The translations under genes and the position numbers were made by a program. From positions 184,580 through 248,579 of the IMG/VR virus record IMGVR_UViG_3300009093_000035: 64,000 nucleotides of DNA, one strand, 5' to 3'. The notes below the pieces were generated by a model. That model had not been told where the DNA came from, made no database searches, and was given only the letters and a program-made list of their open reading frames with translations. Below, one piece after another: positions 4,394-17,855 of this stretch (its first letter is position 1; each line of letters opens with the position of its first letter).

Positions 4394-6028
4394 TCACAGT
4401 GCCGCAGCCGCCTCCTGAGCGGCGACCGGGGCCGGGGCCTTCTCTTCGAGAGAGACGGCCTCGATCTTCTTCACCCAGTGATCCTTGCCCGAGCCCTTGA
4501 CGAACTCGGTCATGAGGGTGAAGACCTCGTCGGAGAAGCCGCCGACGTTGAGGATGTCCTCACGCGTCGGAGCCTGGCGAGAACCGTTCGGCGCGAGGTC
4601 GATGCAGACCATCTTCGCCTTCGGGTTCCGAGCGCGGAGAGCCTCCCACTCGACCATCGCCGCCGTCGGAGACGACGTGTGGCCAGAGGTGTAGGCGTTG
4701 TGGACGACCTTCGTGTCCATCCACGACTCGTTGTCCGAGGCGTAGGTGACGGCGTCCACCTTCTCCTTGTTGTGGTTGAGCGCCCTCATCGGCGCCGAGC
4801 AGTTCGTCCCGCCCGGCGGGCAAGACGCGATCTGGTTCGCGATCGTCATGATCGAGTCCCGCGGGTTGAACCGAAGGTTGATCACGTTCTCCGTGAACGG
4901 GAGAACGATCGCGTCCGGGTTCCGACGCATGAGCGTCGCAGCGATCAGGGCCGCCACGTCACGGCAGGTGACCTTCGTCGCCATCTCGCGCTTCCCCGTG
5001 ACCGGAGACGCCATCGACCCGGAGACGTCCGGGAAGACTGCGATTCGACCCTCGAAGGCCGGAACGTTCTTCGTCGCGATCTCCATCGCGTCCTGGAGAG
5101 CGTTCTGGACCTCCATCGGGACACCCGAGGTGTTCCGGTAGGCGATCAGGAGCTGGTACGGGAAGACCCGAGCCTTCGCGATCGACTCCTCGTCGCGGAG
5201 CTTCGCAGCGATGATCTTCACCATCGCCTTGTCCTCGAAGACGCCGTGGCGGAGGAACGTGTTGAGGTTCATCCGCACCGTCTGCCACGAGGCCGAACGT
5301 GCCAGCTCGATCCACTGGGCCTTCGTCAGCTTCGTGTTCGTGAGCATCAGGAACGGCACGTCCGGGATCGGACGCGACGGATCCTTCTTCCACGCCTCGA
5401 ACTCACGAAGCAGCGGGTCCGCCTTCTCCAGGTCGAACTTCTTCCCCACGAGCCACGCGTAGGTCTCCTTCCGAGCGTCCGTCGCCGGCTTCGGGTGGAC
5501 CATCTTGATCACGTCCGCGATCGACGGCTTGTCGCCCGTCGCCCGGATCAGCTGAGCATCGGTGCGCGCAGCGAACCACGCCTCGACCATCTTCTTCGGA
5601 GCCGTCCCGAGGGACTTCCGGCCGACCTTCCCGGAGCGGATGATCTGGACGAAGTTCCGGACCATCTTCGGGTTGTCGAGGATCCGCGAGAACGACGCCC
5701 GAAGGGCCGCGATACCTGCCGGTCCCCGAGTCGTGAGGTGAGCCGCGAGGAGCGCCGGAGCGTCCTTCATGAAGGCGGACTTCCGCCCGTAGACGGCCGT
5801 CTTCGCGACGAACTCCGGAGAGACCTCGGCCGCAAGCTTCAGGATCGCGTCCAGCTGCTCCTCGTCCGACGTGTAGAACGTCGACCCGAGACAGCCGGTT
5901 GCGGTGTACTGAGCGAGGGCCTCCTTCGGGCCCGCCTTGTAGGCGAGACCGCCGGCCGCGTTGAACATGTCGGCGATCGGCGCGACGCGACCCGCCGGAG
6001 CGGACTTGAAAAGCTTCTTGTTTGCCAC
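4394..6028 (-). CDS. rsr: Ro60/Rsr TROVE-domain RNA-binding protein with C-terminal vWA domain
   Basis: Likely GTG start at 6028 (MANKKLFKS, preceded by AAGGGG); N.AGG.AY, FVAKTAVYGR, MVRNF, VRMNL, ARVFPYQL, MIDAS DVSGSM, GGTNCS, SDNESW, GGFSD. Confidence 0.92.
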   Translation of the reverse strand: MANKKLFKSAPAGRVAPIADMFNAAGGLAYKAGPKEALAQYTATGCLGSTFYTSDEEQLDAILKLAAEVSPEFVAKTAVYGRKSAFMKDAPALLAAHLTTRGPAGIAALRASFSRILDNPKMVRNFVQIIRSGKVGRKSLGTAPKKMVEAWFAARTDAQLIRATGDKPSIADVIKMVHPKPATDARKETYAWLVGKKFDLEKADPLLREFEAWKKDPSRPIPDVPFLMLTNTKLTKAQWIELARSASWQTVRMNLNTFLRHGVFEDKAMVKIIAAKLRDEESIAKARVFPYQLLIAYRNTSGVPMEVQNALQDAMEIATKNVPAFEGRIAVFPDVSGSMASPVTGKREMATKVTCRDVAALIAATLMRRNPDAIVLPFTENVINLRFNPRDSIMTIANQIASCPPGGTNCSAPMRALNHNKEKVDAVTYASDNESWMDTKVVHNAYTSGHTSSPTAAMVEWEALRARNPKAKMVCIDLAPNGSRQAPTREDILNVGGFSDEVFTLMTEFVKGSGKDHWVKKIEAVSLEEKAPAPVAAQEAAAAL

Positions 6029-6055
6029 GGTAACACCCCTTCGAACAAAGGAGGG

Positions 6056-6085
6056 CTCTGGCAACTGGATAGGAGTTCCTTCAGG
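6056..6085. repeat. Arm 1 of a 30-nt long-range inverted repeat (partner 14426-14455)
   Basis: Reverse complement CCTGAAGGAACTCCTATCCAGTTGCCAGAG matches 14426-14455 at 28/30. Confidence 0.9.
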
Positions 6086-6229
6086 AAGATTGAACGTGAG
6101 GTCGTTGACGACGAACGCTTGCGTAGAGCGTTGTCCGCGGAGGTTCAGGAGGCTGATCAATTCCTCCCGTAGGCAAGCCTACTTAGCACCAACGTAGAGC
6201 GTCGCCGACAACTCGGCCTGACCTCACGA

Positions 6230-6786: not shown

Positions 6787-6903
6787 TGTCGAGCGAAGCC
6801 GAGGTCTGGAATCGAACCAGAGGGTAGCTCCGCGGAAGCTGGGGACCACCCCACAACGGAATCGAACCGTCTCCCTGCCAATGTCTCCCGATCTCGCTCG
6901 ACA
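6787..6903 (-). ncRNA. Structured RNA with two T-loop arms in a closed stem
   Basis: 10-bp closing stem TGTCGAGCGA/TCGCTCGACA; ACGG-TTCGATT-CCGT and TCTGG-TTCGATT-CCAGA. Confidence 0.6.
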
Positions 6904-7473: not shown

Positions 7474-7634
7474 AGCTCGCTCGTCTCAGCGTGTATAGCC
7501 ATCACACTTCATCATCGTCGTCGCTACTCGGATTCGAACCGAGTCTCCTGGGCTCTACCATAGCGTGGCGCCAGCCACTCTCGCTCCGATTCTGATGCAC
7601 GGATTCGAACCGTGAACTCTGAGACTCACGAACC
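7474..7634 (-). ncRNA. Double tRNA-elbow RNA (permuted tRNA module enclosing a second T-arm module)
   Basis: Closing GTCTCAG/CTGAGAC; T arm CACGG-TTCGAAT-CCGTG; CATCA/TGATG; D-like GTGT-GATGGCTAT-ACAC; inner GCTA..CTCGG-TTCGAAT-CCGAG-TAGC. Confidence 0.6.
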
Positions 7635-7651
7635 TTCGGGCTGCAGCCCTA

Positions 7652-7772
7652 CCCGGAACGCGGGATTCGAACCCGCCTGAAGGGAAGGGTTGCTAGACCT
7701 CCCCACCGCCGCCTTTCCCTGTCCTCTAGCGAACAGGTACAGACAGCCGCTCACCATCTGGCGTACTTCCGA
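7652..7772 (-). ncRNA. tRNA-like RNA with elongated anticodon and variable arms
   Basis: CGGAA/TTCCG acceptor, AGATGGT D-loop, GCGGG-TTCGAAT-CCCGC T arm; two long hairpins with complementary loops GCTAGA/TCTAGC. Confidence 0.55.
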
Positions 7773-7897: not shown

Positions 7898-8446
7898 TCA
7901 GGACCCCTCTTCGATCGGAGCATTCCAGTACACGTAGGAGGCCCACGCGTCCGGGATGTTCGTCAACGAAAACCGCATGGTGACTACCGGGAGATACGCG
8001 GGCTTCACGGGCTGCTTGCGCAGCTTCATCCCCGCGCGCTCCGGAGTCCGGTCGGCCTTCTTCTCGTTGCACGAGTAGCAGGCCATCACGATGTTCTCCC
8101 AGGTCGTCCTACCGCCGTGAGAGCGGGGGGTGACGTGGTCGTACGTGAGCTTCGAGAGCGGGAGCTTCCCGGTACCCGGAGGGCAGTACTGACAGGTGAA
8201 GTTGTCCCGCGTCGCTACGTTCACCCGAGAGAACTTCACGGCCTGCTTCTTGCCGCGGATCCTCCCGAGGAGACGAACGACGGCCGGCATCTTGAAGGAG
8301 AGGGTCACGTGGATTTCCTCGTTGTACTCCTCCACTACCTCGGCGACGTTGTCGAGGACCATACACACGGCCCTCTGCCAGTCCACGATCCTGTGGGGTA
8401 CCCACCCCTGATCCAATACGAGAGTTGTTTGCACGGCCTTACCCAC
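7898..8446 (-). CDS. HNH endonuclease (McrA-like)
   Basis: RDNFTCQYC, LTYDHVTPRSHGGRTTWENIVMACYSCNEKK; type often found in tRNA arrays. Confidence 0.92.
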   Translation of the reverse strand: MGKAVQTTLVLDQGWVPHRIVDWQRAVCMVLDNVAEVVEEYNEEIHVTLSFKMPAVVRLLGRIRGKKQAVKFSRVNVATRDNFTCQYCPPGTGKLPLSKLTYDHVTPRSHGGRTTWENIVMACYSCNEKKADRTPERAGMKLRKQPVKPAYLPVVTMRFSLTNIPDAWASYVYWNAPIEEGS

Positions 8447-8469
8447 CTTTCCTGAGCTGTTGTTTTGGT

Positions 8470-8552
8470 TGCGAGAGGAGGGAGTCGAACCCTCACGCCC
8501 CGAAGGGCACCGATTTTTGAGACCGGCGCGTCTGCCATTCCGCCACTCTCGC
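8470..8552 (-). tRNA. tRNA-Leu(CAA)
   Basis: Cloverleaf, V arm; loop CTCAAAA. Confidence 0.92.
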
Positions 8553-8578
8553 GTCTACTGAAACTTACTCGAAAGGGA

Positions 8579-8664
8579 TGCCCGGGGGGAGAGTCGAACT
8601 CCCACGACCGCTAGGATCGCCGCCTTCTGAGGACGGTGTGTCTACCAAGTTCCACCACCCGGGC
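8579..8664 (-). tRNA. tRNA-Leu(CAG)
   Basis: Loop CTCAGAA, V arm. Confidence 0.92.
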
Positions 8665-8680
8665 TCAAAAACCTACTCAC

Positions 8681-8762
8681 TGCGGAAGAGGGGACTTGAA
8701 CCCCTACGCCACAAGGACACTGGAACCTAAACCCAGCGCGTCTGCCATTCCGCCACTTCCGC
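8681..8762 (-). tRNA. tRNA-Leu(UAG)
   Basis: Loop TTTAGGT, V arm. Confidence 0.92.
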
Positions 8763-8768
8763 TCTACA

Positions 8769-8851
8769 TGGGGACGGGGGGACTTGAACCCCCACGTCAC
8801 GAAGGACACTAGCACCTCAAGCTAGCGCGTCTGCCTTTCCGCCACGTCCCC
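8769..8851 (-). tRNA. tRNA-Leu(GAG)
   Basis: Loop TTGAGGT, V arm. Confidence 0.92.
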
Positions 8852-8868
8852 ATTACGAATCGAACCAG

Positions 8869-8954
8869 TGCTCGGGGGGAGAGTCGAACTCCCATGACCG
8901 CGAAGGATCGTTGGATTCTTAGTCCAGTGTGTCTGCCAGTTCCACCACCCGAGC
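8869..8954 (-). tRNA. tRNA-Leu(AAG)
   Basis: Loop CTAAGAA, Leu-type D and V arms. Confidence 0.85.
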
Positions 8955-9030
8955 GTACGAACCGAAGATTGTCCAAGATCGAGAGGGGCCCTCCGAGGAA
9001 TCCCTCGGGGGCTGATCCTCCCGTCCGGTA

Positions 9031-9102
9031 TGCGCGAAGAGGGGATTGAACCCCCGACCGTCGCCGTGTAAAGGCGCTGCTCTTCCGCTGAGCTATCCGC
9101 GC
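9031..9102 (-). tRNA. tRNA-Val(UAC)
   Basis: Loop TTTACAC. Confidence 0.9.
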
Positions 9103-9107
9103 GTTGA

Positions 9108-9199
9108 TGGACCTACCTGGACTCGAACCAGGTCAATCGCCGCTCGACCACCCCAGGTTTTCCTTGCTGTGAGGCGATTACGTCACTGAGGTTAGGCCC
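9108..9199 (-). ncRNA. Mini-tmRNA-like RNA (tRNA-like domain only)
   Basis: Acceptor GGGCCTA/TAGGTCC with G3.U70 and A73, stemless D region, helix AATCGCC/GGCGATT, GA then CCTGG-TTCGAGT-CCAGG. Confidence 0.6.
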
Positions 9200-9302
9200 A
9201 TCGAATTGGTTCTCCATGCGCGCTATTCGGAGGAGAAGCCCGAAATGTACGGCGACCGGACTACGTGGCCCACACCACCCGTTATGTCGCTGCGCTTTGG
9301 TC

Positions 9303-9375
9303 TGCACGACCGGAGGATCGAACTCCGCTAGAACGGCTTGTGATACCGTCGCCCTCTCCAGATGGCTCGCCGTGC
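9303..9375 (-). tRNA. tRNA-Val(CAC), atypical D arm
   Basis: GACGGT-ATCACAA-GCCGTT; acceptor GCACGGC/GTCGTGC. Confidence 0.75.
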
Positions 9376-9521
9376 GTCAGGCTCGTCTCGACCCGCGGCC
9401 CCCGAGAGGGCGGAACCCCATCAGGACCATCACTACCGCCACCGGGGGCCAGAGGATGGACTCGACTGCGAGACGAACACGTACTTTGAAGGGCATCCCC
9501 TACCCTACTCGAAGAAACCAA

Positions 9522-9593
9522 TCGGGGTGACAGGGATCGAACCTGCGATCTCACCGTCCCGAACGGTGCGCGATACCACTTCGCTACACCCCG
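9522..9593 (-). tRNA. tRNA-Pro(CGG)
   Basis: CACCG-TTCGGGA-CGGTG. Confidence 0.92.
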
Positions 9594-9769
9594 ATAAATC
9601 GTACTTCGGCGGGTCTCTCACCCCGCATCCTTCCAGGTCCGGATTCCCGTCCGTCTACGCGGCCTTGTACCGCTCCCTCGCTGCTTGTCGTCAGCGGCCC
9701 TGTACGATCGTTCACGAGAAGGGTTCGCCCCGACGCTGCAGACGCCGAGACTACTTTTCCGACTCGCTA

Positions 9770-9838
9770 TCCCTCCCGACGGAATCGAACCGCCTCGTAC
9801 GCCCGTATGAAAGGCATCGCCTCGCCAGAAAGAGAGGG
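9770..9838 (-). tRNA. tRNA(CAU) (Met or Ile2) lacking a D stem
   Basis: Acceptor CCCTCTC/GGGAGGG, loop TTCATAC, T arm GGCGG-TTCGATT-CCGTC. Confidence 0.6.
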
Positions 9839-9845
9839 GTGGACA

Positions 9846-9918
9846 CGTCTCCAGTAGGATTCGAACCTACAATGGACCCTTCGGAGGGGTCAGTGATATC
9901 CAGTTTCACCATGGAGAC
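9846..9918 (-). tRNA. tRNA-Arg(CCG)
   Basis: GACCC-CTCCGAA-GGGTC. Confidence 0.88.
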
Positions 9919-9941
9919 ATTGGCCTTCTACCAAACCAGAG

Positions 9942-10013
9942 CGTCTTCGGAAGGATTCGAACCTTCAATAAGCGGTTCGTAGCCGCTCGTGATATCCATT
10001 TCACCACGAAGAC
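9942..10013 (-). tRNA. tRNA-Arg(ACG)
   Basis: AGCGG-CTACGAA-CCGCT. Confidence 0.9.
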
Positions 10014-10594: not shown

Positions 10595-10606
10595 ATACGA
10601 ACCGGA

Positions 10607-11012
10607 TGGACTCGTCCGGAATTGAACCGGAGTCCACGAAGTCTACTACGATCGAGTACCACGCGCGTCTTCAACTCTTACGCCTGTCTTTCTAACGAGG
10701 AAGGCGCGAGGCTTGACAACCTCTCTTTCGGAACTCCCCGCGAAGTCTGCTCGGTTCCCCGCCTCGACTTCGATCGTCCCTCAGATCGCCTTTCGGCTCC
10801 CGCTGAGGTACAGCCGGGATTCCCCTAGCTCGATTACGCCAACGAGGAGAGTGCTAGGGACTCTCCTCGCCGACGGATCAGGCCGCCTGAGCGAGCTGAT
10901 CGTAGCTGCTGTCGTTCGCAGTTACTGTTGGTTGGCTTGATAACCCGGCCTGCCTACCACCCGGAGCGCGCACTCTCTCGTTTCGAACCCCATGTCGAAA
11001 CCTGTCGAGCCC
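10607..11012 (-). ncRNA. ssrA: tmRNA; tag ANDSSYDQLAQAA* at 10878-10919
   Basis: 5' GGGCTCGACAGGTTTCGAC, 3' GGACTCCGGTTCAATTCCGGACGAGTCCA, G3.U70, resume context TAACT-GCG AAC GAC. Confidence 0.95.
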
Positions 11013-12239: not shown

Positions 12240-12371
12240 CGGGTGACAAGAGCGGAGAAGACGTTTTTTGGACTGCCGCTCTACCATCTGAGCTACCACC
12301 CCCTTTCGGAGACGGGCGGGACTCGAACCCGCGACCCGCAGTGTTGTTGTAGTCCTATTCCAATTCACCCG
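12240..12371 (-). ncRNA. Y RNA-like #2 (YrlA-type, permuted tRNA module)
   Basis: CGGGUGAAU..GACUACA / CUUGUCACCCG; T arm GCGGG-TTCGAGT-CCCGC, GAAA-capped acceptor, then D arm TAGCTCAGATGGTAGAGC. Confidence 0.85.
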
Positions 12372-12449: not shown

Positions 12450-12588
12450 TTGCGAGAGAGGGACTTGAACCCCCACGAGCGCTTCCGTTACTTCCCTGGG
12501 AAGCGCTTCCCGTACGGGTTTCACGGATGGGCCTAGGACCCTGTCTCTCCGAGTCGCCTCGGCGCGTCTGCCATTTCGCCATCTCGCA
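12450..12588 (-). ncRNA. Anticodon-less oversized tRNA-Leu mimic A
   Basis: Acceptor TGCGAGA/TCTCGCA, Leu D arm GGCGAAATGGCAGACGC, anticodon arm capped by GCGA, three hairpins in the variable region, normal T arm. Confidence 0.7.
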
Positions 12589-12596
12589 TCGAACAC

Positions 12597-12748
12597 TAGG
12601 GAGAAGGGGAATCGAACCCCCACCGGGCTCTACAGGACTCTCCGCGGTTCGCGACCCTCGGATCCTCCCGTTGGCTCGGGGTGCGCACCCCTTACCGTCC
12701 CTGCCGGAACTTTCATCCCGGTGCGTCTACCAGTTCCGCCATCTCCCG
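12597..12748 (-). ncRNA. Anticodon-less oversized tRNA-Leu mimic B
   Basis: Leu D arm GGCGGAACTGGTAGACGC, CCGGGAT-GAAA-GTTCCGG, ~80-nt structured variable region, normal T arm. Confidence 0.7.
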
Positions 12749-12770
12749 TCAACGAACGGAAGGAAAAGTT

Positions 12771-12903
12771 TGGGCGACAAGTGTTGGCGAAGATCTTTTC
12801 GTCGCTCTACCAACTGAGCTACCGCCCCGTGAAAGTGGGGCGGGCTGGACTCGAACCAGCGGCCTCCGGCTTGAAATGCTGTAATCCTCTCCGAATTCAC
12901 CCA
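12771..12903 (-). ncRNA. Y RNA-like #3 (YrlA-type)
   Basis: UGGGUGAAU..GAUUACA / CUUGUCGCCCA; GCTGG-TTCGAGT-CCAGC, closed acceptor CCGCCCC/GGGGCGG, D arm TAGCTCAGTTGGTAGAGC. Confidence 0.85.
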
Positions 12904-13390: not shown

Positions 13391-13514
13391 CGTGCGACAA
13401 GAGTGACAGCGACGTTTTCTAGGCCCGAGCCTCGCTCCCTTTCGGGAACGACCAGGATTCGAACCTGGCTCGATTGTTGTTCATACAATGTAGTCCCCAT
13501 CGAGTATTCGCACG
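13391..13514 (-). ncRNA. Y RNA-like #5 (T arm plus GAAA-closed acceptor, degenerate D arm)
   Basis: CGUGCGAAU..GACUACA / CUUGUCGCACG; CCAGG-TTCGAAT-CCTGG; TCGTTCCC-GAAA-GGGAGCGA. Confidence 0.8.
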
Positions 13515-14796: not shown

Positions 14797-14879
14797 TGGA
14801 GACGCCAGGAATCGAACCTGATTTCCTCCGAAGAGGGGCGGGGTTACAGTCCGCCTACGAGGCCACTCGTATCATCTCC
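14797..14879 (-). tRNA. tRNA-Tyr(GUA)
   Basis: Loop CTGTAAC, V arm. Confidence 0.8.
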
Positions 14880-16646: not shown

Positions 16647-17855
16647 ATGACCCAGATCACCAGCTCGAAGTCGGTCGCCCTCATGAAGTTCCTCTCGGCC
16701 CTCGCCCGAAAGCTCGGGGTAGGGGCTCACGTCTACGTCGTGGGTGGGGCCGTCCGGAACTTCCTCATGGGACAGCCGGTGAAGGACCTCGACGTCGTGA
16801 TCGACTCGATCGCCCTCGGAGAAGGTCGAGACAGCGCCTGGTTCGCGTCCAACGTTCTGGAGGCGATCCCCGAGTGGTCCAACCTCACGACGAACCAGTA
16901 CGGGGTCGCGATCCTCACGGTGAAGGGACCCTGGGTCCTCGACGGCTTCTCCATGGAGGGGGAAGTGATCGAGATCGCCAACGCTCGGAAGGAGTCCTAC
17001 GGGTCCTCGGGCGGGAAAGGGAAGGGCTACAAGCCCACCGACGTCCAGCCCTCCACGATCGAGGAGGACATCTACCGGCGCGAGTTCACGTTCAACACCT
17101 TGCTGTGGCGCCTCGAAGACGTTGCGGAAGGACCGGAAGGGGCTCCGGTGATCGACATCACGGGGCTCGGCCTCACCCACCTCAAAGAGAAGCTGATCCA
17201 AACGCCTCTCGATCCGGACCGGACGTTCTCCGACGACCCGACGAGGATGCTCCGGGCGATCAAGTTCCTCATGCGCTACGACCTCCGCCTCTCCGAAGAG
17301 GTCGAGCGGTCGATCATGAAGAACGCCTCGAAGATGACCCAGATGCCTTGGGAGGCGGTCGCTACGATCCTCGTCCGTGACATCCTCTCGCTCCCCAGCG
17401 CGAAGGAAGCTCTCTTCCGGATGATGGGGCTCGGGCTCGTTCGAGTTCTGAAGGGGATGGTCCAGGACCAGCCTCCCTTCGCCTCGTACATGGCGGGTCA
17501 GTTCGGCTCGGGCGAGGCGGACCTGAAGCTTCTCGTCCTCATGGATGACCTCGGGCTCGGAGGACGCGCGTTCAGCTTCCTCTCCCCGGCCCAGAAGGTT
17601 CGCTTCAAGGCTCTGGTCGTCGGGGCCGAGGACGAGTGGGTCCGGAAGCTCTACACGCTTCTCCAGAAGCCCCCGATCCGATCTCTGGCTCTGTTCGCGG
17701 ACTTCGGCCTCGAAGGGAAGGCGCGGTCAGCCCCCGCGATCTTCGCCCGAGAGGCGATCCTCGAAGACCTCTCGTTGGTCGAAGAGCCGGAACGGATCGA
17801 AGCGGTCGTACGGGAGATGCTCGGGGGGATTCCGCCGGCCCCTCCCGCCCCCTAG
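16647..17855 (+). CDS. cca: Class II CCA-adding tRNA nucleotidyltransferase / poly(A) polymerase family
   Basis: YVVGGAVRN..DLDVV, IEIANARKESY, EDIYRREFTFN, FSDDPTRMLRAIKF; tRNAs here lack encoded CCA. Confidence 0.85.
   Translation: MTQITSSKSVALMKFLSALARKLGVGAHVYVVGGAVRNFLMGQPVKDLDVVIDSIALGEGRDSAWFASNVLEAIPEWSNLTTNQYGVAILTVKGPWVLDGFSMEGEVIEIANARKESYGSSGGKGKGYKPTDVQPSTIEEDIYRREFTFNTLLWRLEDVAEGPEGAPVIDITGLGLTHLKEKLIQTPLDPDRTFSDDPTRMLRAIKFLMRYDLRLSEEVERSIMKNASKMTQMPWEAVATILVRDILSLPSAKEALFRMMGLGLVRVLKGMVQDQPPFASYMAGQFGSGEADLKLLVLMDDLGLGGRAFSFLSPAQKVRFKALVVGAEDEWVRKLYTLLQKPPIRSLALFADFGLEGKARSAPAIFAREAILEDLSLVEEPERIEAVVREMLGGIPPAPPAP

What the first reader, a model, noticed from the sequence alone, without database searches (positions are those of the whole stretch)
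9108..9199. Mini-tmRNA: Ala-identity tRNA-like domain without an mRNA domain, besides a full tmRNA
Seen: 92-nt RNA with acceptor G3.U70 and A73, no D stem (ends TGAC, like tmRNA UCGAC), a P2-like helix and GA before the T arm. This is tmRNA TLD geometry, but it encloses only ~30 nt. Inference: an SmpB sponge or a tagless ribosome-rescue RNA that would spare proteins from ssrA degradation.
Basis: partly seen in the sequence, partly recalled or inferred. Interest (0 to 1): 0.72.

Follow-up and report, generated by a model that had tools for sequence, protein, structure and literature searches.

The report
Anticodon-less alanine tRNA-like gene in phage
A 92-base gene in a giant phage's tRNA cluster keeps the alanine-accepting half of a tRNA but has no anticodon arm; it does not pass the tests for a mini-tmRNA and is absent from a close relative of the phage, so it is most likely a rearranged tRNA-Ala gene.

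Summary
The sequence features are real. Window 9108-9199 (- strand) has a perfect 7-bp acceptor stem with G3:U70 and A73, a perfect T arm with a canonical T loop, and no D or anticodon arm. It lies 5 nt upstream of tRNA-Val(tac) in a 45-tRNA array that also holds a full tmRNA. In this array G3:U70 occurs only in the three tRNA-Ala genes, the tmRNA and this element.

The mini-tmRNA reading is not supported. Genuine tRNA-like-domain-only (TLD-only) tmRNAs from phage DS6A, Streptomyces phages and IMG/VR contigs score 40-64 bits with Rfam's tmRNA model. They score 56-67 bits with my own TLD-only model. The element scores below 14.9 bits and 28.3 bits, which is inside the range of ordinary tRNAs. 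It lacks the GG..UUCGAC loop, the GGAC junction and the conserved CCGCAYGCGG hairpin. The proposed P2-like helix is only one of two near-equal folds (probability 0.34).

Identical copies occur in four soil datasets. A roughly 93%-identical phage lacks exactly these 98 bp, and more distant relatives have nothing at this site.

My best reading is a tRNA-Ala-derived, probably still processable and chargeable, non-decoding RNA that is dispensable. TLD-only tmRNAs in phages are already known, so interest is modest.

The parts
9108..9199 (-). The 92-nt tRNA-like element (RNA position p = window 9200-p)
   Evidence: Read directly. Not called by ARAGORN or by Rfam at gathering scores. The only weak Rfam matches are tRNA-Sec at 14.9 bits and a spurious YrlA match.
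9193..9199 (-). Acceptor stem, 5' strand GGGCCUA (G3 at 9197)
   Evidence: Pairs 7 of 7 with 9109-9115. Pair probability is 0.96-1.0 for pairs 1-6 and 0.52 for pair 7.
9108..9115 (-). Acceptor stem, 3' strand UAGGUCC (U70 at 9111) plus discriminator A73 (9108). No CCA is encoded.
   Evidence: The next tRNA, Val(tac), starts 5 nt downstream.
9116..9132 (-). T arm CCUGG-UUCGAGU-CCAGG
   Evidence: The stem pairs 5 of 5 and the T loop is canonical. Pair probability is 0.84.
9173..9179 (-).
   Evidence: Forms 7 Watson-Crick pairs with 9135-9141. Ensemble probability is 0.34; it competes with hairpin 22-30/45-53 at probability 0.5.
9135..9141 (-). 3' strand of the P2-like helix (RNA positions 59-65), followed by GA (9133-9134) before the T stem
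   Evidence: My TLD-only model R1 threads this helix onto the family's P2 helix but gains no score above the tRNA background.
9137..9154 (-). 18-nt internal motif GGGGUGGUCGAGCGGCGA with a D-loop-like signature (AG.GG). It is shared 16 of 18 with the 163-nt Ala-type tRNA-like RNA of a related phage (L011:9494-9511).
   Evidence: BLAST. The pattern scan of IMG/VR found, besides L011's contig, five other loci that look unrelated (sequences read).
9107..9204 (.). 98-bp presence/absence unit: the element plus 5 nt upstream and 1 nt downstream
   Evidence: A contig of DNA run X4 (peat) joins 9106 directly to 9205. It has 0 mismatches over 9018-9106 and 2 nt of microhomology.
9031..9102 (-). tRNA-Val(tac), immediately downstream
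9303..9375 (-). tRNA-Val(cac), upstream neighbour, separated by a 103-nt spacer
   Evidence: No promoter-like or terminator-like sites were found in 8400-10000.
10604..11012 (-). Full-length phage tmRNA with its own G3:U70 acceptor stem
   Evidence: Rfam 95.9 bits, ARAGORN tag ANDSSYDQLAQAA. Two near-identical contigs in metatranscriptome run X5 cover 10669-10978.
16647..17855 (+). ORF with the nucleotidyltransferase domain of the CCA-adding enzyme family. It is relevant because the array's tRNA genes, the tmRNA and the element do not encode CCA.
   Evidence: PF01743 at 55.8 bits, G000:201310-201777 = window 16731-17198. ORF listed.

Best explanation
The element is a stand-alone tRNA-like gene descended from a tRNA-Ala-type gene. 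It keeps an intact acceptor/T-arm minihelix but has lost a recognisable D arm and the whole anticodon arm. One irregular arm of about 57 nt stands in their place.

Shown:
- The minihelix is perfect and carries the alanine identity set G3:U70 plus A73.
- The gene lies in register inside a tRNA array with no promoter or terminator signals of its own.
- The phage encodes an enzyme of the CCA-adding family.
- The element is not a tmRNA tRNA-like-domain (TLD) homologue by two covariance models.
- It is missing from a close relative of the phage.

Inferred from established tRNA biochemistry:
- It is co-transcribed with its neighbours and cut out by RNase P and the 3' processing enzymes.
- It then receives CCA and can be charged by AlaRS, because all of these enzymes need only the acceptor/T half.
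- It cannot decode.

I read it as an accessory, dispensable by-product of gene gain, loss and rearrangement in a fast-changing tRNA array. I do not read it as a dedicated trans-translation factor.
For: - Perfect acceptor and T arms with G3:U70 and A73. In this array that combination is restricted to the tRNA-Ala genes, the tmRNA and this element.
- The 5' linker keeps CUCAG, the most conserved part of a tRNA D arm.
- There is no cloverleaf: ARAGORN and Rfam tRNA give no call.
- The interior has no significant fold (z = -1.16, two competing helices).
- The interior has no other copy in the 248-kb genome.
- tmRNA model: no match. TLD-only model R1: 28.3 bits, within the tRNA background, against 56-67 bits for true members.
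- A precise 98-bp absence in the X4 relative. No element at the same site in L021, where Met and Val(tac) lie 13 nt apart, nor in L011.
- Copies in L019, X2 and X3 are identical, so they give no sign of constraint.
- No promoter-like or terminator-like sites nearby, and a CCA-adding-family ORF is present.
Against: - The minihelix has no defect at all, which a long-dead pseudogene would not be expected to keep.
- An internal 18-nt motif is shared 16 of 18 with a well-folded (z = -3.8) 163-nt Ala-type tRNA-like RNA in a phage whose Ro60 is only 73% identical. This suggests an older and possibly selected RNA family.
- The same array holds two further tRNA-like RNAs of tRNA-Leu type. By my reading of the sequence, their anticodon loops are replaced by GNRA-type tetraloops; the unconstrained fold did not reproduce these hairpins.
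- Phages do carry functional-looking TLD-only RNAs, in one case beside a full tmRNA (Riptide).
- Expression, processing and charging were not observed. RNA run X5 shows depth 0 over the element, but the tmRNA depth there is only 2, so this says little.
Confidence: 0.5

Rival explanations
1. The element is a tRNA-like-domain-only (TLD-only) mini-tmRNA. It is alanylated and binds SmpB, and it either titrates SmpB or enters stalled ribosomes without adding a tag.
For: - Ala-identity acceptor stem, T arm and no D stem.
- A possible linker-helix-GA-T arm layout that my model R1 can thread onto the TLD-only architecture.
- TLD-only RNAs exist in phages: DS6A (PMC4131195, PMC11915505) and, found here, the Streptomyces phages BRock, LuckySocke, GiJojo, pSt2308 and Riptide plus three IMG/VR contigs.
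- Riptide has both a TLD-only RNA and a full tmRNA.
- Riptide's copy also has UGA in place of GGAC before the T arm.
Against: - No tmRNA-model match, against 40-64 bits for true TLD-only RNAs.
- R1 gives 28.3 bits, inside the tRNA background, while the held-out Riptide and second L005 RNAs score 67.0 and 55.9 bits.
- It lacks GG..UU(C/U)GAC, GGAC and the family's conserved CCGCAYGCGG hairpin.
- The P2-like helix is the minority fold.
- No SmpB gene lies in the 248-kb record.
- It is absent from a close relative that keeps the tmRNA.
Confidence: 0.12
2. It is a functional member of a separate, undescribed class of phage tRNA mimics. These keep the identity elements of synthetases that ignore the anticodon (Ala here, Leu at 12454-12748). 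They would act as chargeable decoys or carriers, for example for AlaRS, EF-Tu or host toxins that attack tRNA acceptor ends, or as amino-acid donors outside the ribosome.
For: - Flawless minihelix with full Ala identity.
- Shared internal motif with L011's structured 163-nt Ala-type RNA. L011 also has a 58-nt Ala minihelix.
- By my reading of the sequence, two Leu-type tRNA-like RNAs in the same array have tetraloop-capped 'anticodon' stems.
- Many orphan T arms occur in the array.
Against: - No covariation is available.
- The element's interior is not significantly structured.
- It is dispensable in a close relative.
- The Leu-type RNAs have no BLAST match in the relatives' loci.
- The pattern of synthetase classes rests on two or three independent cases.
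- No target is known.
Confidence: 0.25
3. It is a Y RNA-type partner of the phage's Ro60 protein (gene at 4394-6160).
For: - Ro60 is encoded 2.9 kb away.
- Y RNAs of bacteria and phages contain tRNA-like modules, and some escape bioinformatic detection (PMC4201824).
- RNA positions 51-56 and 64-69 could form GGUCGA/UUGACC. From memory, this resembles the metazoan Ro-binding helix without its bulge.
- The T arm shares 15 nt with the T-like arm of the YrlA candidate at 12768-12903.
Against: - The phage already has two good YrlA-like RNAs, at 51.3 and 39.9 bits, with a different Ro-binding stem.
- In YrlA the ends of the RNA form the Ro-binding stem and the tRNA-like part is permuted. Here the ends form an acceptor stem.
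- The GGUCGA/UUGACC helix has probability 0.01 and clashes with the T stem.
- That helix is not conserved in L011.
- The Rfam YrlA match (14.7 bits) spans two genes and is spurious.
Confidence: 0.04
4. It is a decoding tRNA with an unusual fold, or with an intervening sequence that is removed.
For: - Its 92-nt length is that of class II tRNAs or tRNA-Sec.
- There is a weak tRNA-Sec match (14.9 bits, E = 2.4).
- Other tRNA-like genes of the array carry long insertions.
Against: - No 7-nt anticodon loop with U33 can be drawn.
- No D stem exists.
- Removing any single internal block leaves no cloverleaf.
- The fold has a 7-bp acceptor and a 5-bp T stem, not the 8/4 or 9/4 arrangement.
- The score is far below the gathering score of 47 bits.
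Confidence: 0.03

Closest known systems
TLD-only ('CDS-less') tmRNA of mycobacteriophage DS6A and its relatives (tmRNA Website; PMC4131195, PMC11915505). Found here also in Streptomyces phages BRock, LuckySocke, GiJojo, pSt2308 and Riptide and in IMG/VR contigs L002, L004 and L005.
   Same: - A phage-encoded RNA of about 80-90 nt.
- G3:U70 and A73 acceptor stem with a canonical T arm.
- No anticodon arm and no tag reading frame.
- Often located in a tRNA array near tRNA-Val(tac).
- Can coexist with a full tmRNA, as in Riptide.
   Different: - The family has GG.UU(C/U)GAC, a 5-bp covarying P2 helix, GGAC before the T arm and a conserved CCGCAYGCGG hairpin. The element has none of these apart from GAC and GA.
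- Rfam tmRNA model: 40-64 bits for the family against no match for the element.
- My TLD-only model R1: 56-67 bits against 28.3 bits.
tRNA-Ala and the alanine minihelix (acceptor/T-arm hairpins with G3:U70, which AlaRS is known to charge)
   Same: The acceptor stem has the same type as the phage's three tRNA-Ala genes (GGG.../...UCC-A). The T arm is canonical. The 5' linker keeps CUCAG of a D arm.
   Different: There is no D stem and no anticodon arm. The tRNA model and ARAGORN do not call it. The interior has no match elsewhere in the genome.
The 163-nt Ala-type tRNA-like RNA of a related phage (L011:9447-9609, IMGVR_UViG_3300037484_000235)
   Same: G3:U70 and A73 acceptor stem, an identical T loop (UUCGAGU), a 4-5-bp stem with a 14-16-nt loop at the anticodon-arm position, followed by the shared motif GGGGUGGUC.AG.GGCGA.
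   Different: L011's RNA keeps a canonical D arm, carries about 70 extra nt with two further hairpins, folds significantly (z = -3.8) and encodes CCA. It lies next to Ro60 rather than between the Val genes. MAFFT does not align the two RNAs consistently.
YrlA-type bacterial and phage Y RNAs (RF02553; PMC4201824)
   Same: A tRNA mimic encoded near a Ro60 gene, with a T arm almost identical to that of the phage's own YrlA-like RNA.
   Different: YrlA is a permuted tRNA-like module whose ends form the Ro-binding stem. The element's ends form an aminoacyl-acceptor stem, and there is no credible YrlA-model match.

Membership tests
tmRNA / TLD-only mini-tmRNA | Acceptor stem with G3:U70 and discriminator A73 (alanine identity) | tested here: met
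   GGGCCUA/UAGGUCC-A, 7 of 7 pairs.
tmRNA / TLD-only mini-tmRNA | T arm with a canonical T loop stacked on the acceptor stem | tested here: met
   CCUGG-UUCGAGU-CCAGG, pair probability 0.84.
tmRNA / TLD-only mini-tmRNA | Single-stranded D-loop analogue with conserved GG and UU(C/U)GAC | tested here: not met
   The linker is AACCUCAGUGAC. Only GAC matches and there is no GG. The family alignment shows GG.UU(C/U)GAC in 5 of 7 members, and DS6A keeps GGUCGAC.
tmRNA / TLD-only mini-tmRNA | P2 helix closed by GAC/GGA pairs, with GGAC directly before the T stem | tested here: inconclusive
   A 7-bp helix is possible but has probability 0.34 against a rival fold at 0.5. UUGA stands where GGAC should be. 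Riptide, a true member, also has UGA there.
tmRNA / TLD-only mini-tmRNA | Significant score with the Rfam tmRNA covariance model (RF00023) | tested here: not met
   No match at E<=10. TLD-only controls score 64.5, 57.1, 49.6, 43.7, 43.2 and 40.0 bits. Ordinary tRNAs of the array reach 16-22 bits.
tmRNA / TLD-only mini-tmRNA | Score above the tRNA background with a model built from TLD-only RNAs (R1) | tested here: not met
   The element scores 28.3 bits. tRNA-Lys scores 30.3, tRNA-Ala 25.8 and L011's tRNA-Ala 32.6. Held-out members score 67.0 and 55.9 bits.
tmRNA / TLD-only mini-tmRNA | Conserved apical hairpin CCGCAYGCGG of the phage TLD-only family | tested here: not met
   Absent from the element. 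Present in 6 of 7 aligned members, in Riptide and in GiJojo, whose copy is identical to LuckySocke's.
tmRNA / TLD-only mini-tmRNA | Binding of SmpB and charging by AlaRS | not testable with these tools
Canonical tRNA (RF00005) | Cloverleaf with a D arm and an anticodon arm bearing a 7-nt loop | tested here: not met
   Not called by ARAGORN or Rfam. No such arms can be drawn.
tRNA-Sec / unusual long tRNAs | Extended acceptor stem (8/4 or 9/4 fold), 6-bp D stem and long variable arm, with a score above the gathering threshold | tested here: not met
   14.9 bits against a gathering score of 47, E = 2.4. The fold has a 7-bp acceptor and a 5-bp T stem.
YrlA / Y RNA (RF02553) | 5' and 3' ends form the Ro60-binding stem, with a permuted tRNA-like module between them | tested here: not met
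   The ends form an acceptor stem. The only YrlA match (14.7 bits) spans the element's T arm and the next tRNA's D arm. True YrlA-like RNAs lie at 12768-12903 and 12252-12371.

The most novel reading that the evidence does not exclude
The element, L011's 163-nt and 58-nt Ala-type RNAs and the two tetraloop-capped Leu-type RNAs of this array would together represent an undescribed class of phage tRNA mimics. These would stay chargeable because AlaRS and LeuRS ignore the anticodon, but they cannot decode. The phage would use them to divert or protect parts of the host's translation or RNA-quality-control machinery: SmpB, EF-Tu, synthetases, acceptor-end toxins or Ro60.
Probability: 0.15. Interest if true: 0.6.

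Novelty: new variant of a known kind. Interest (0 to 1): 0.3.

Why it matters
If the RNA were made and charged, it would add a second, structurally different kind of anticodon-less alanine acceptor to the known phage TLD-only tmRNAs. It would sit in a giant phage that also carries a full tmRNA, Ro60, Y RNA-like RNAs and a CCA-adding-family enzyme, which together form a toolkit for handling host translation and RNA quality control.

As the evidence stands, the practical value is mostly for annotation:
- Ala-type minihelix genes in phage tRNA arrays should not be called mini-tmRNAs on the acceptor stem and T arm alone.
- Genuine TLD-only genes are unannotated in several Streptomyces phage records. 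They are easy to recognise with a dedicated model.

Tried and rejected
- Near and distant BLAST of the element against 50,697 phage records found only T-arm matches to ordinary tRNAs.
- The interior has no second copy in the 248-kb genome or in any fetched locus.
- IMG/VR pattern scans: the acceptor-specific pattern brought tRNA-Ala genes and TLD-only RNAs but no homologue of the element. The internal-motif pattern brought only L011's contig and unrelated coding DNA.
- A pattern scan of genome contigs found nothing.
- Relatives fetched through Ro60 in IMG/VR and in metagenomes gave two identical copies (one of them the window's own contig) and otherwise loci without the element.
- A neighbouring 518-aa ORF found no relatives.
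- The SmpB-RNA complex prediction was not folded by the tool and gives no evidence.
- A short tag reading frame was considered. The only open frame between stops (UAA at RNA positions 20-22 to UGA at 65-67) has no Ala resume codon and no hydrophobic tail, so I rejected it by reading.
- Y RNA identity was rejected.
- MAFFT alignment of the element with L011's RNAs was inconsistent, because a similar motif occurs twice in L011. Homology to L011 therefore remains probable, not proven.
- RNA run X5 shows nothing over the element, but coverage is too thin to count as absence.

Full report
**What is there**

On the - strand, window 9199 to 9108 encodes a 92-nt RNA.
- Its ends form a perfect 7-bp stem, GGCCUA preceded by G on the 5' side and UAGGUCC on the 3' side. 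The third pair is G.U and an unpaired A follows the stem.
- Next to the stem lies a perfect 5-bp T stem with the canonical loop UUCGAGU.
- The 60 nt between the acceptor 5' strand and the T stem contain no D stem and no anticodon stem-loop.
- ARAGORN and Rfam at gathering scores skip the element while calling 45 tRNAs and a full tmRNA around it.
- With permissive thresholds the only matches are tRNA-Sec (14.9 bits, E = 2.4) and a YrlA match that spans two genes.
- I tabulated acceptor stems across the array. G3:U70 occurs only in the three tRNA-Ala genes, the tmRNA and this element, and in none of about 40 other tRNAs (tmRNA alignment).

The alanine-type minihelix is therefore real and not a chance match. 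The element ends 5 nt before tRNA-Val(tac), and no promoter-like or terminator-like signals lie nearby.

**Context**

- The window is the last 64 kb of a 248,579-bp IMG/VR virus record that CheckV rates 56% complete. That points to a very large phage, found in rhizosphere metagenomes.
- The tRNA genes, the tmRNA and the element do not encode CCA.
- The phage carries an ORF of the CCA-adding enzyme family just beyond the array.
- No SmpB or AlaRS gene lies in the record.
- Inside the array sit a Ro60 orthologue and two YrlA-like RNAs (51.3 and 39.9 bits).

**Is it a tmRNA tRNA-like domain (TLD)?**

The idea has precedent. Mycobacteriophage DS6A carries a 'TLD only' tmRNA, and a similar molecule inhibits tmRNA in E. 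coli (PMC4131195, PMC11915505).

My first pattern scan turned up such RNAs, and BLAST found more in Streptomyces phages, where they are unannotated. They form a tight family of 78-82 nt with these parts:
- a G3:U70 acceptor stem;
- GG.UU(C/U)GAC;
- a covarying 5-bp P2 helix;
- an apical CCGCAYGCGG hairpin;
- GGAC followed by the T arm.

Scores of the element against these controls:

| Model | Genuine TLD-only RNAs | Ordinary tRNAs | The element |
|---|---|---|---|
| Rfam tmRNA (RF00023) | 40.0-64.5 bits | 16-22 bits in this array | no match at E<=10; any hidden match is below 14.9 bits |
| My TLD-only model R1 | held-out members 67.0 (Riptide) and 55.9 (second RNA of L005) | 30.3 (tRNA-Lys), 25.8 (tRNA-Ala), 32.6 (L011's tRNA-Ala) | 28.3 bits |

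The element's score comes from the acceptor stem and T arm alone. Of the family's signature it has only GAC and GA.

In the thermodynamic ensemble, however, it has probability 0.34 (-31.9 kcal/mol), against 0.5 (-33.1 kcal/mol) for a competing G.U-rich hairpin. The molecule as a whole is not more stable than shuffled sequences (z = -1.16).

SmpB binding could not be assessed, because the complex tool did not fold the job.

**Distribution**

- Identical copies occur in a second metagenome contig, L019, which differs at 2 of 21,764 bases.
- Identical copies also occur in DNA runs X2 and X3.
- A peat run, X4, holds a relative with about 7% differences in the tmRNA. One of its contigs joins 9106 directly to 9205. 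It therefore lacks exactly 98 bp, the element plus 6 flanking bases, while matching 9018-9106 perfectly.
- In L021 (Ro60 76% identical) tRNA-Met and tRNA-Val(tac) lie 13 nt apart, with no element and no tmRNA at the corresponding sites.
- In L011 (Ro60 73% identical) the corresponding gap holds unrelated sequence.

L011 does contain, next to its Ro60 gene, a 163-nt RNA with these features:
- an Ala-type acceptor stem (G3:U70, A73);
- a normal D arm and the same T loop;
- a short stem with a large loop at the anticodon-arm position, followed by a motif 16 of 18 identical to RNA positions 46-63 of the element.

It folds well (z = -3.8). The BLAST E-value for the motif alone was 0.095. That the match falls inside the only other long Ala-type tRNA-like RNA of a 21.6-kb locus makes homology probable. 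MAFFT does not align the two RNAs consistently, so homology is not proven. L011 also has a 58-nt Ala-type minihelix.

**Expression**

A rhizosphere metatranscriptome, X5, contains two near-identical 151-nt contigs that cover most of the tmRNA. It contains nothing from the spacers, which fits a stable tmRNA. It shows depth 0 over the element, but the tmRNA depth is only 2 and small structured RNAs assemble poorly. This is therefore not evidence of absence.

**Interpretation**

The minihelix is sufficient, by established biochemistry, for RNase P, CCA addition, AlaRS and EF-Tu. If the RNA is made it should be an alanine acceptor that cannot decode.

The following points lead me to favour a rearranged tRNA-Ala gene carried along in a rapidly changing array (confidence 0.5):
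- it lacks the TLD signature;
- its interior is poorly defined;
- it is absent from a close relative;
- no constraint on it can be detected.

The following points keep functional readings alive:
- the minihelix is flawless;
- it shares a motif with L011's structured RNA;
- two Leu-type tRNA-like RNAs lie in the same array. By my reading of the sequence, their anticodon loops are replaced by GAAA and GCGA tetraloops. The unconstrained fold did not reproduce these hairpins.

Y RNA identity (0.04) and an unusual decoding tRNA (0.03) are unlikely.

**Novelty**

TLD-only tmRNAs in phages are known, and one occurs beside a full tmRNA in Riptide. This element is not one of them by the tests I could run. 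It is a variant of the broader known theme of anticodon-less tRNA mimics, and no function is demonstrated.

Noticed in passing
window 4394-6160 (-): A 588-aa ORF inside the tRNA array is a Ro60/Rsr orthologue (Pfam vWA_Ro60 2.9e-21, TROVE 2e-7). Relatives at 44-77% identity occur in many large metagenomic phage contigs.
   Followed up: partly
window 12768-12903 (-) and 12252-12371 (-): Two YrlA-type Y RNA-like genes score 51.3 and 39.9 bits, below Rfam's gathering score of 69 but with E-values of 1.5e-10 and 3.1e-7. They flank tRNA-Arg(cct). The related phage has one at L011:237-373 (59 bits).
   Followed up: partly
window 12597-12748 (-) and about 12454-12592 (-): Two tandem tRNA-Leu-like RNAs of 152 and about 139 nt have a Leu-type D arm, A73 and a T arm. 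By my reading of the sequence, the anticodon loop is replaced by a GAAA or GCGA tetraloop and about 70 extra nt precede the T arm; an unconstrained fold did not reproduce the tetraloop hairpins. They have no BLAST match in the related loci.
   Followed up: partly
window 7527-7676, 6805-6871, 13452-13468, 14805-14821 (-): Further perfect T-arm motifs are not covered by ARAGORN. The one at 14797-14879 looks like a class II tRNA (Rfam tRNA-Sec 37.5 bits). The others may be non-canonical tRNA-Ser genes like those seen in L010:620-1000.
   Followed up: no
window 10604-11012 (-): The full phage tmRNA has tag ANDSSYDQLAQAA. Near-identical contigs occur in a rhizosphere metatranscriptome while the flanking spacers are absent, which suggests the tmRNA accumulates as RNA. 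The tmRNA is missing at the same array position in relatives L021 and L011. L011's genome has one 55 kb away (94.3 bits).
   Followed up: partly
window 16647-17855 (+): An ORF with the nucleotidyltransferase domain of the CCA-adding enzyme family (PF01743, 55.8 bits) lies next to an array whose tRNA genes lack encoded CCA. The relative L011 encodes CCA in its tRNA genes.
   Followed up: partly
window 7898-8446 (-): An HNH endonuclease ORF (Pfam HNH 9.5e-13) lies inside the tRNA array.
   Followed up: no
L008:3001-3078, L009:2992-3069, L048:151-228, L050:126-203, L049:127-203: Streptomyces phages LuckySocke, BRock, GiJojo, pSt2308 and Riptide carry 77-78-nt TLD-only tmRNA genes shortly after tRNA-Val(tac). 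They are unannotated, and in GiJojo the site is overlapped by a 'hypothetical protein' CDS. Riptide also has a full tmRNA.
   Followed up: yes
L005:1061-1142 and L005:2385-2463: One 97-kb IMG/VR phage contig carries two different TLD-only-type RNAs in its tRNA array (58.8 and 55.9 bits with my TLD-only model R1).
   Followed up: partly
L011:9447-9609 and L011:9242-9299: The related giant phage has a 163-nt, well-folded (z = -3.8) Ala-type tRNA-like RNA and a 58-nt Ala-type minihelix just upstream of tRNA-Gly(gcc) and Ro60. Rfam's tmRNA model matches the 3' 101 nt of the former at 26.8 bits, which is no better than that genome's tRNA-Ala genes.
   Followed up: partly
window 9376-9518: In the X4 relative this 143-nt spacer between tRNA-Pro(cgg) and tRNA-Val(cac) is replaced by 11 other letters. 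Inter-tRNA spacers therefore turn over quickly between strains.
   Followed up: no
L008:2870-2990: LuckySocke has a tRNA-like gene with an insertion of about 50 nt in the anticodon region, just before its TLD-only RNA.
   Followed up: no
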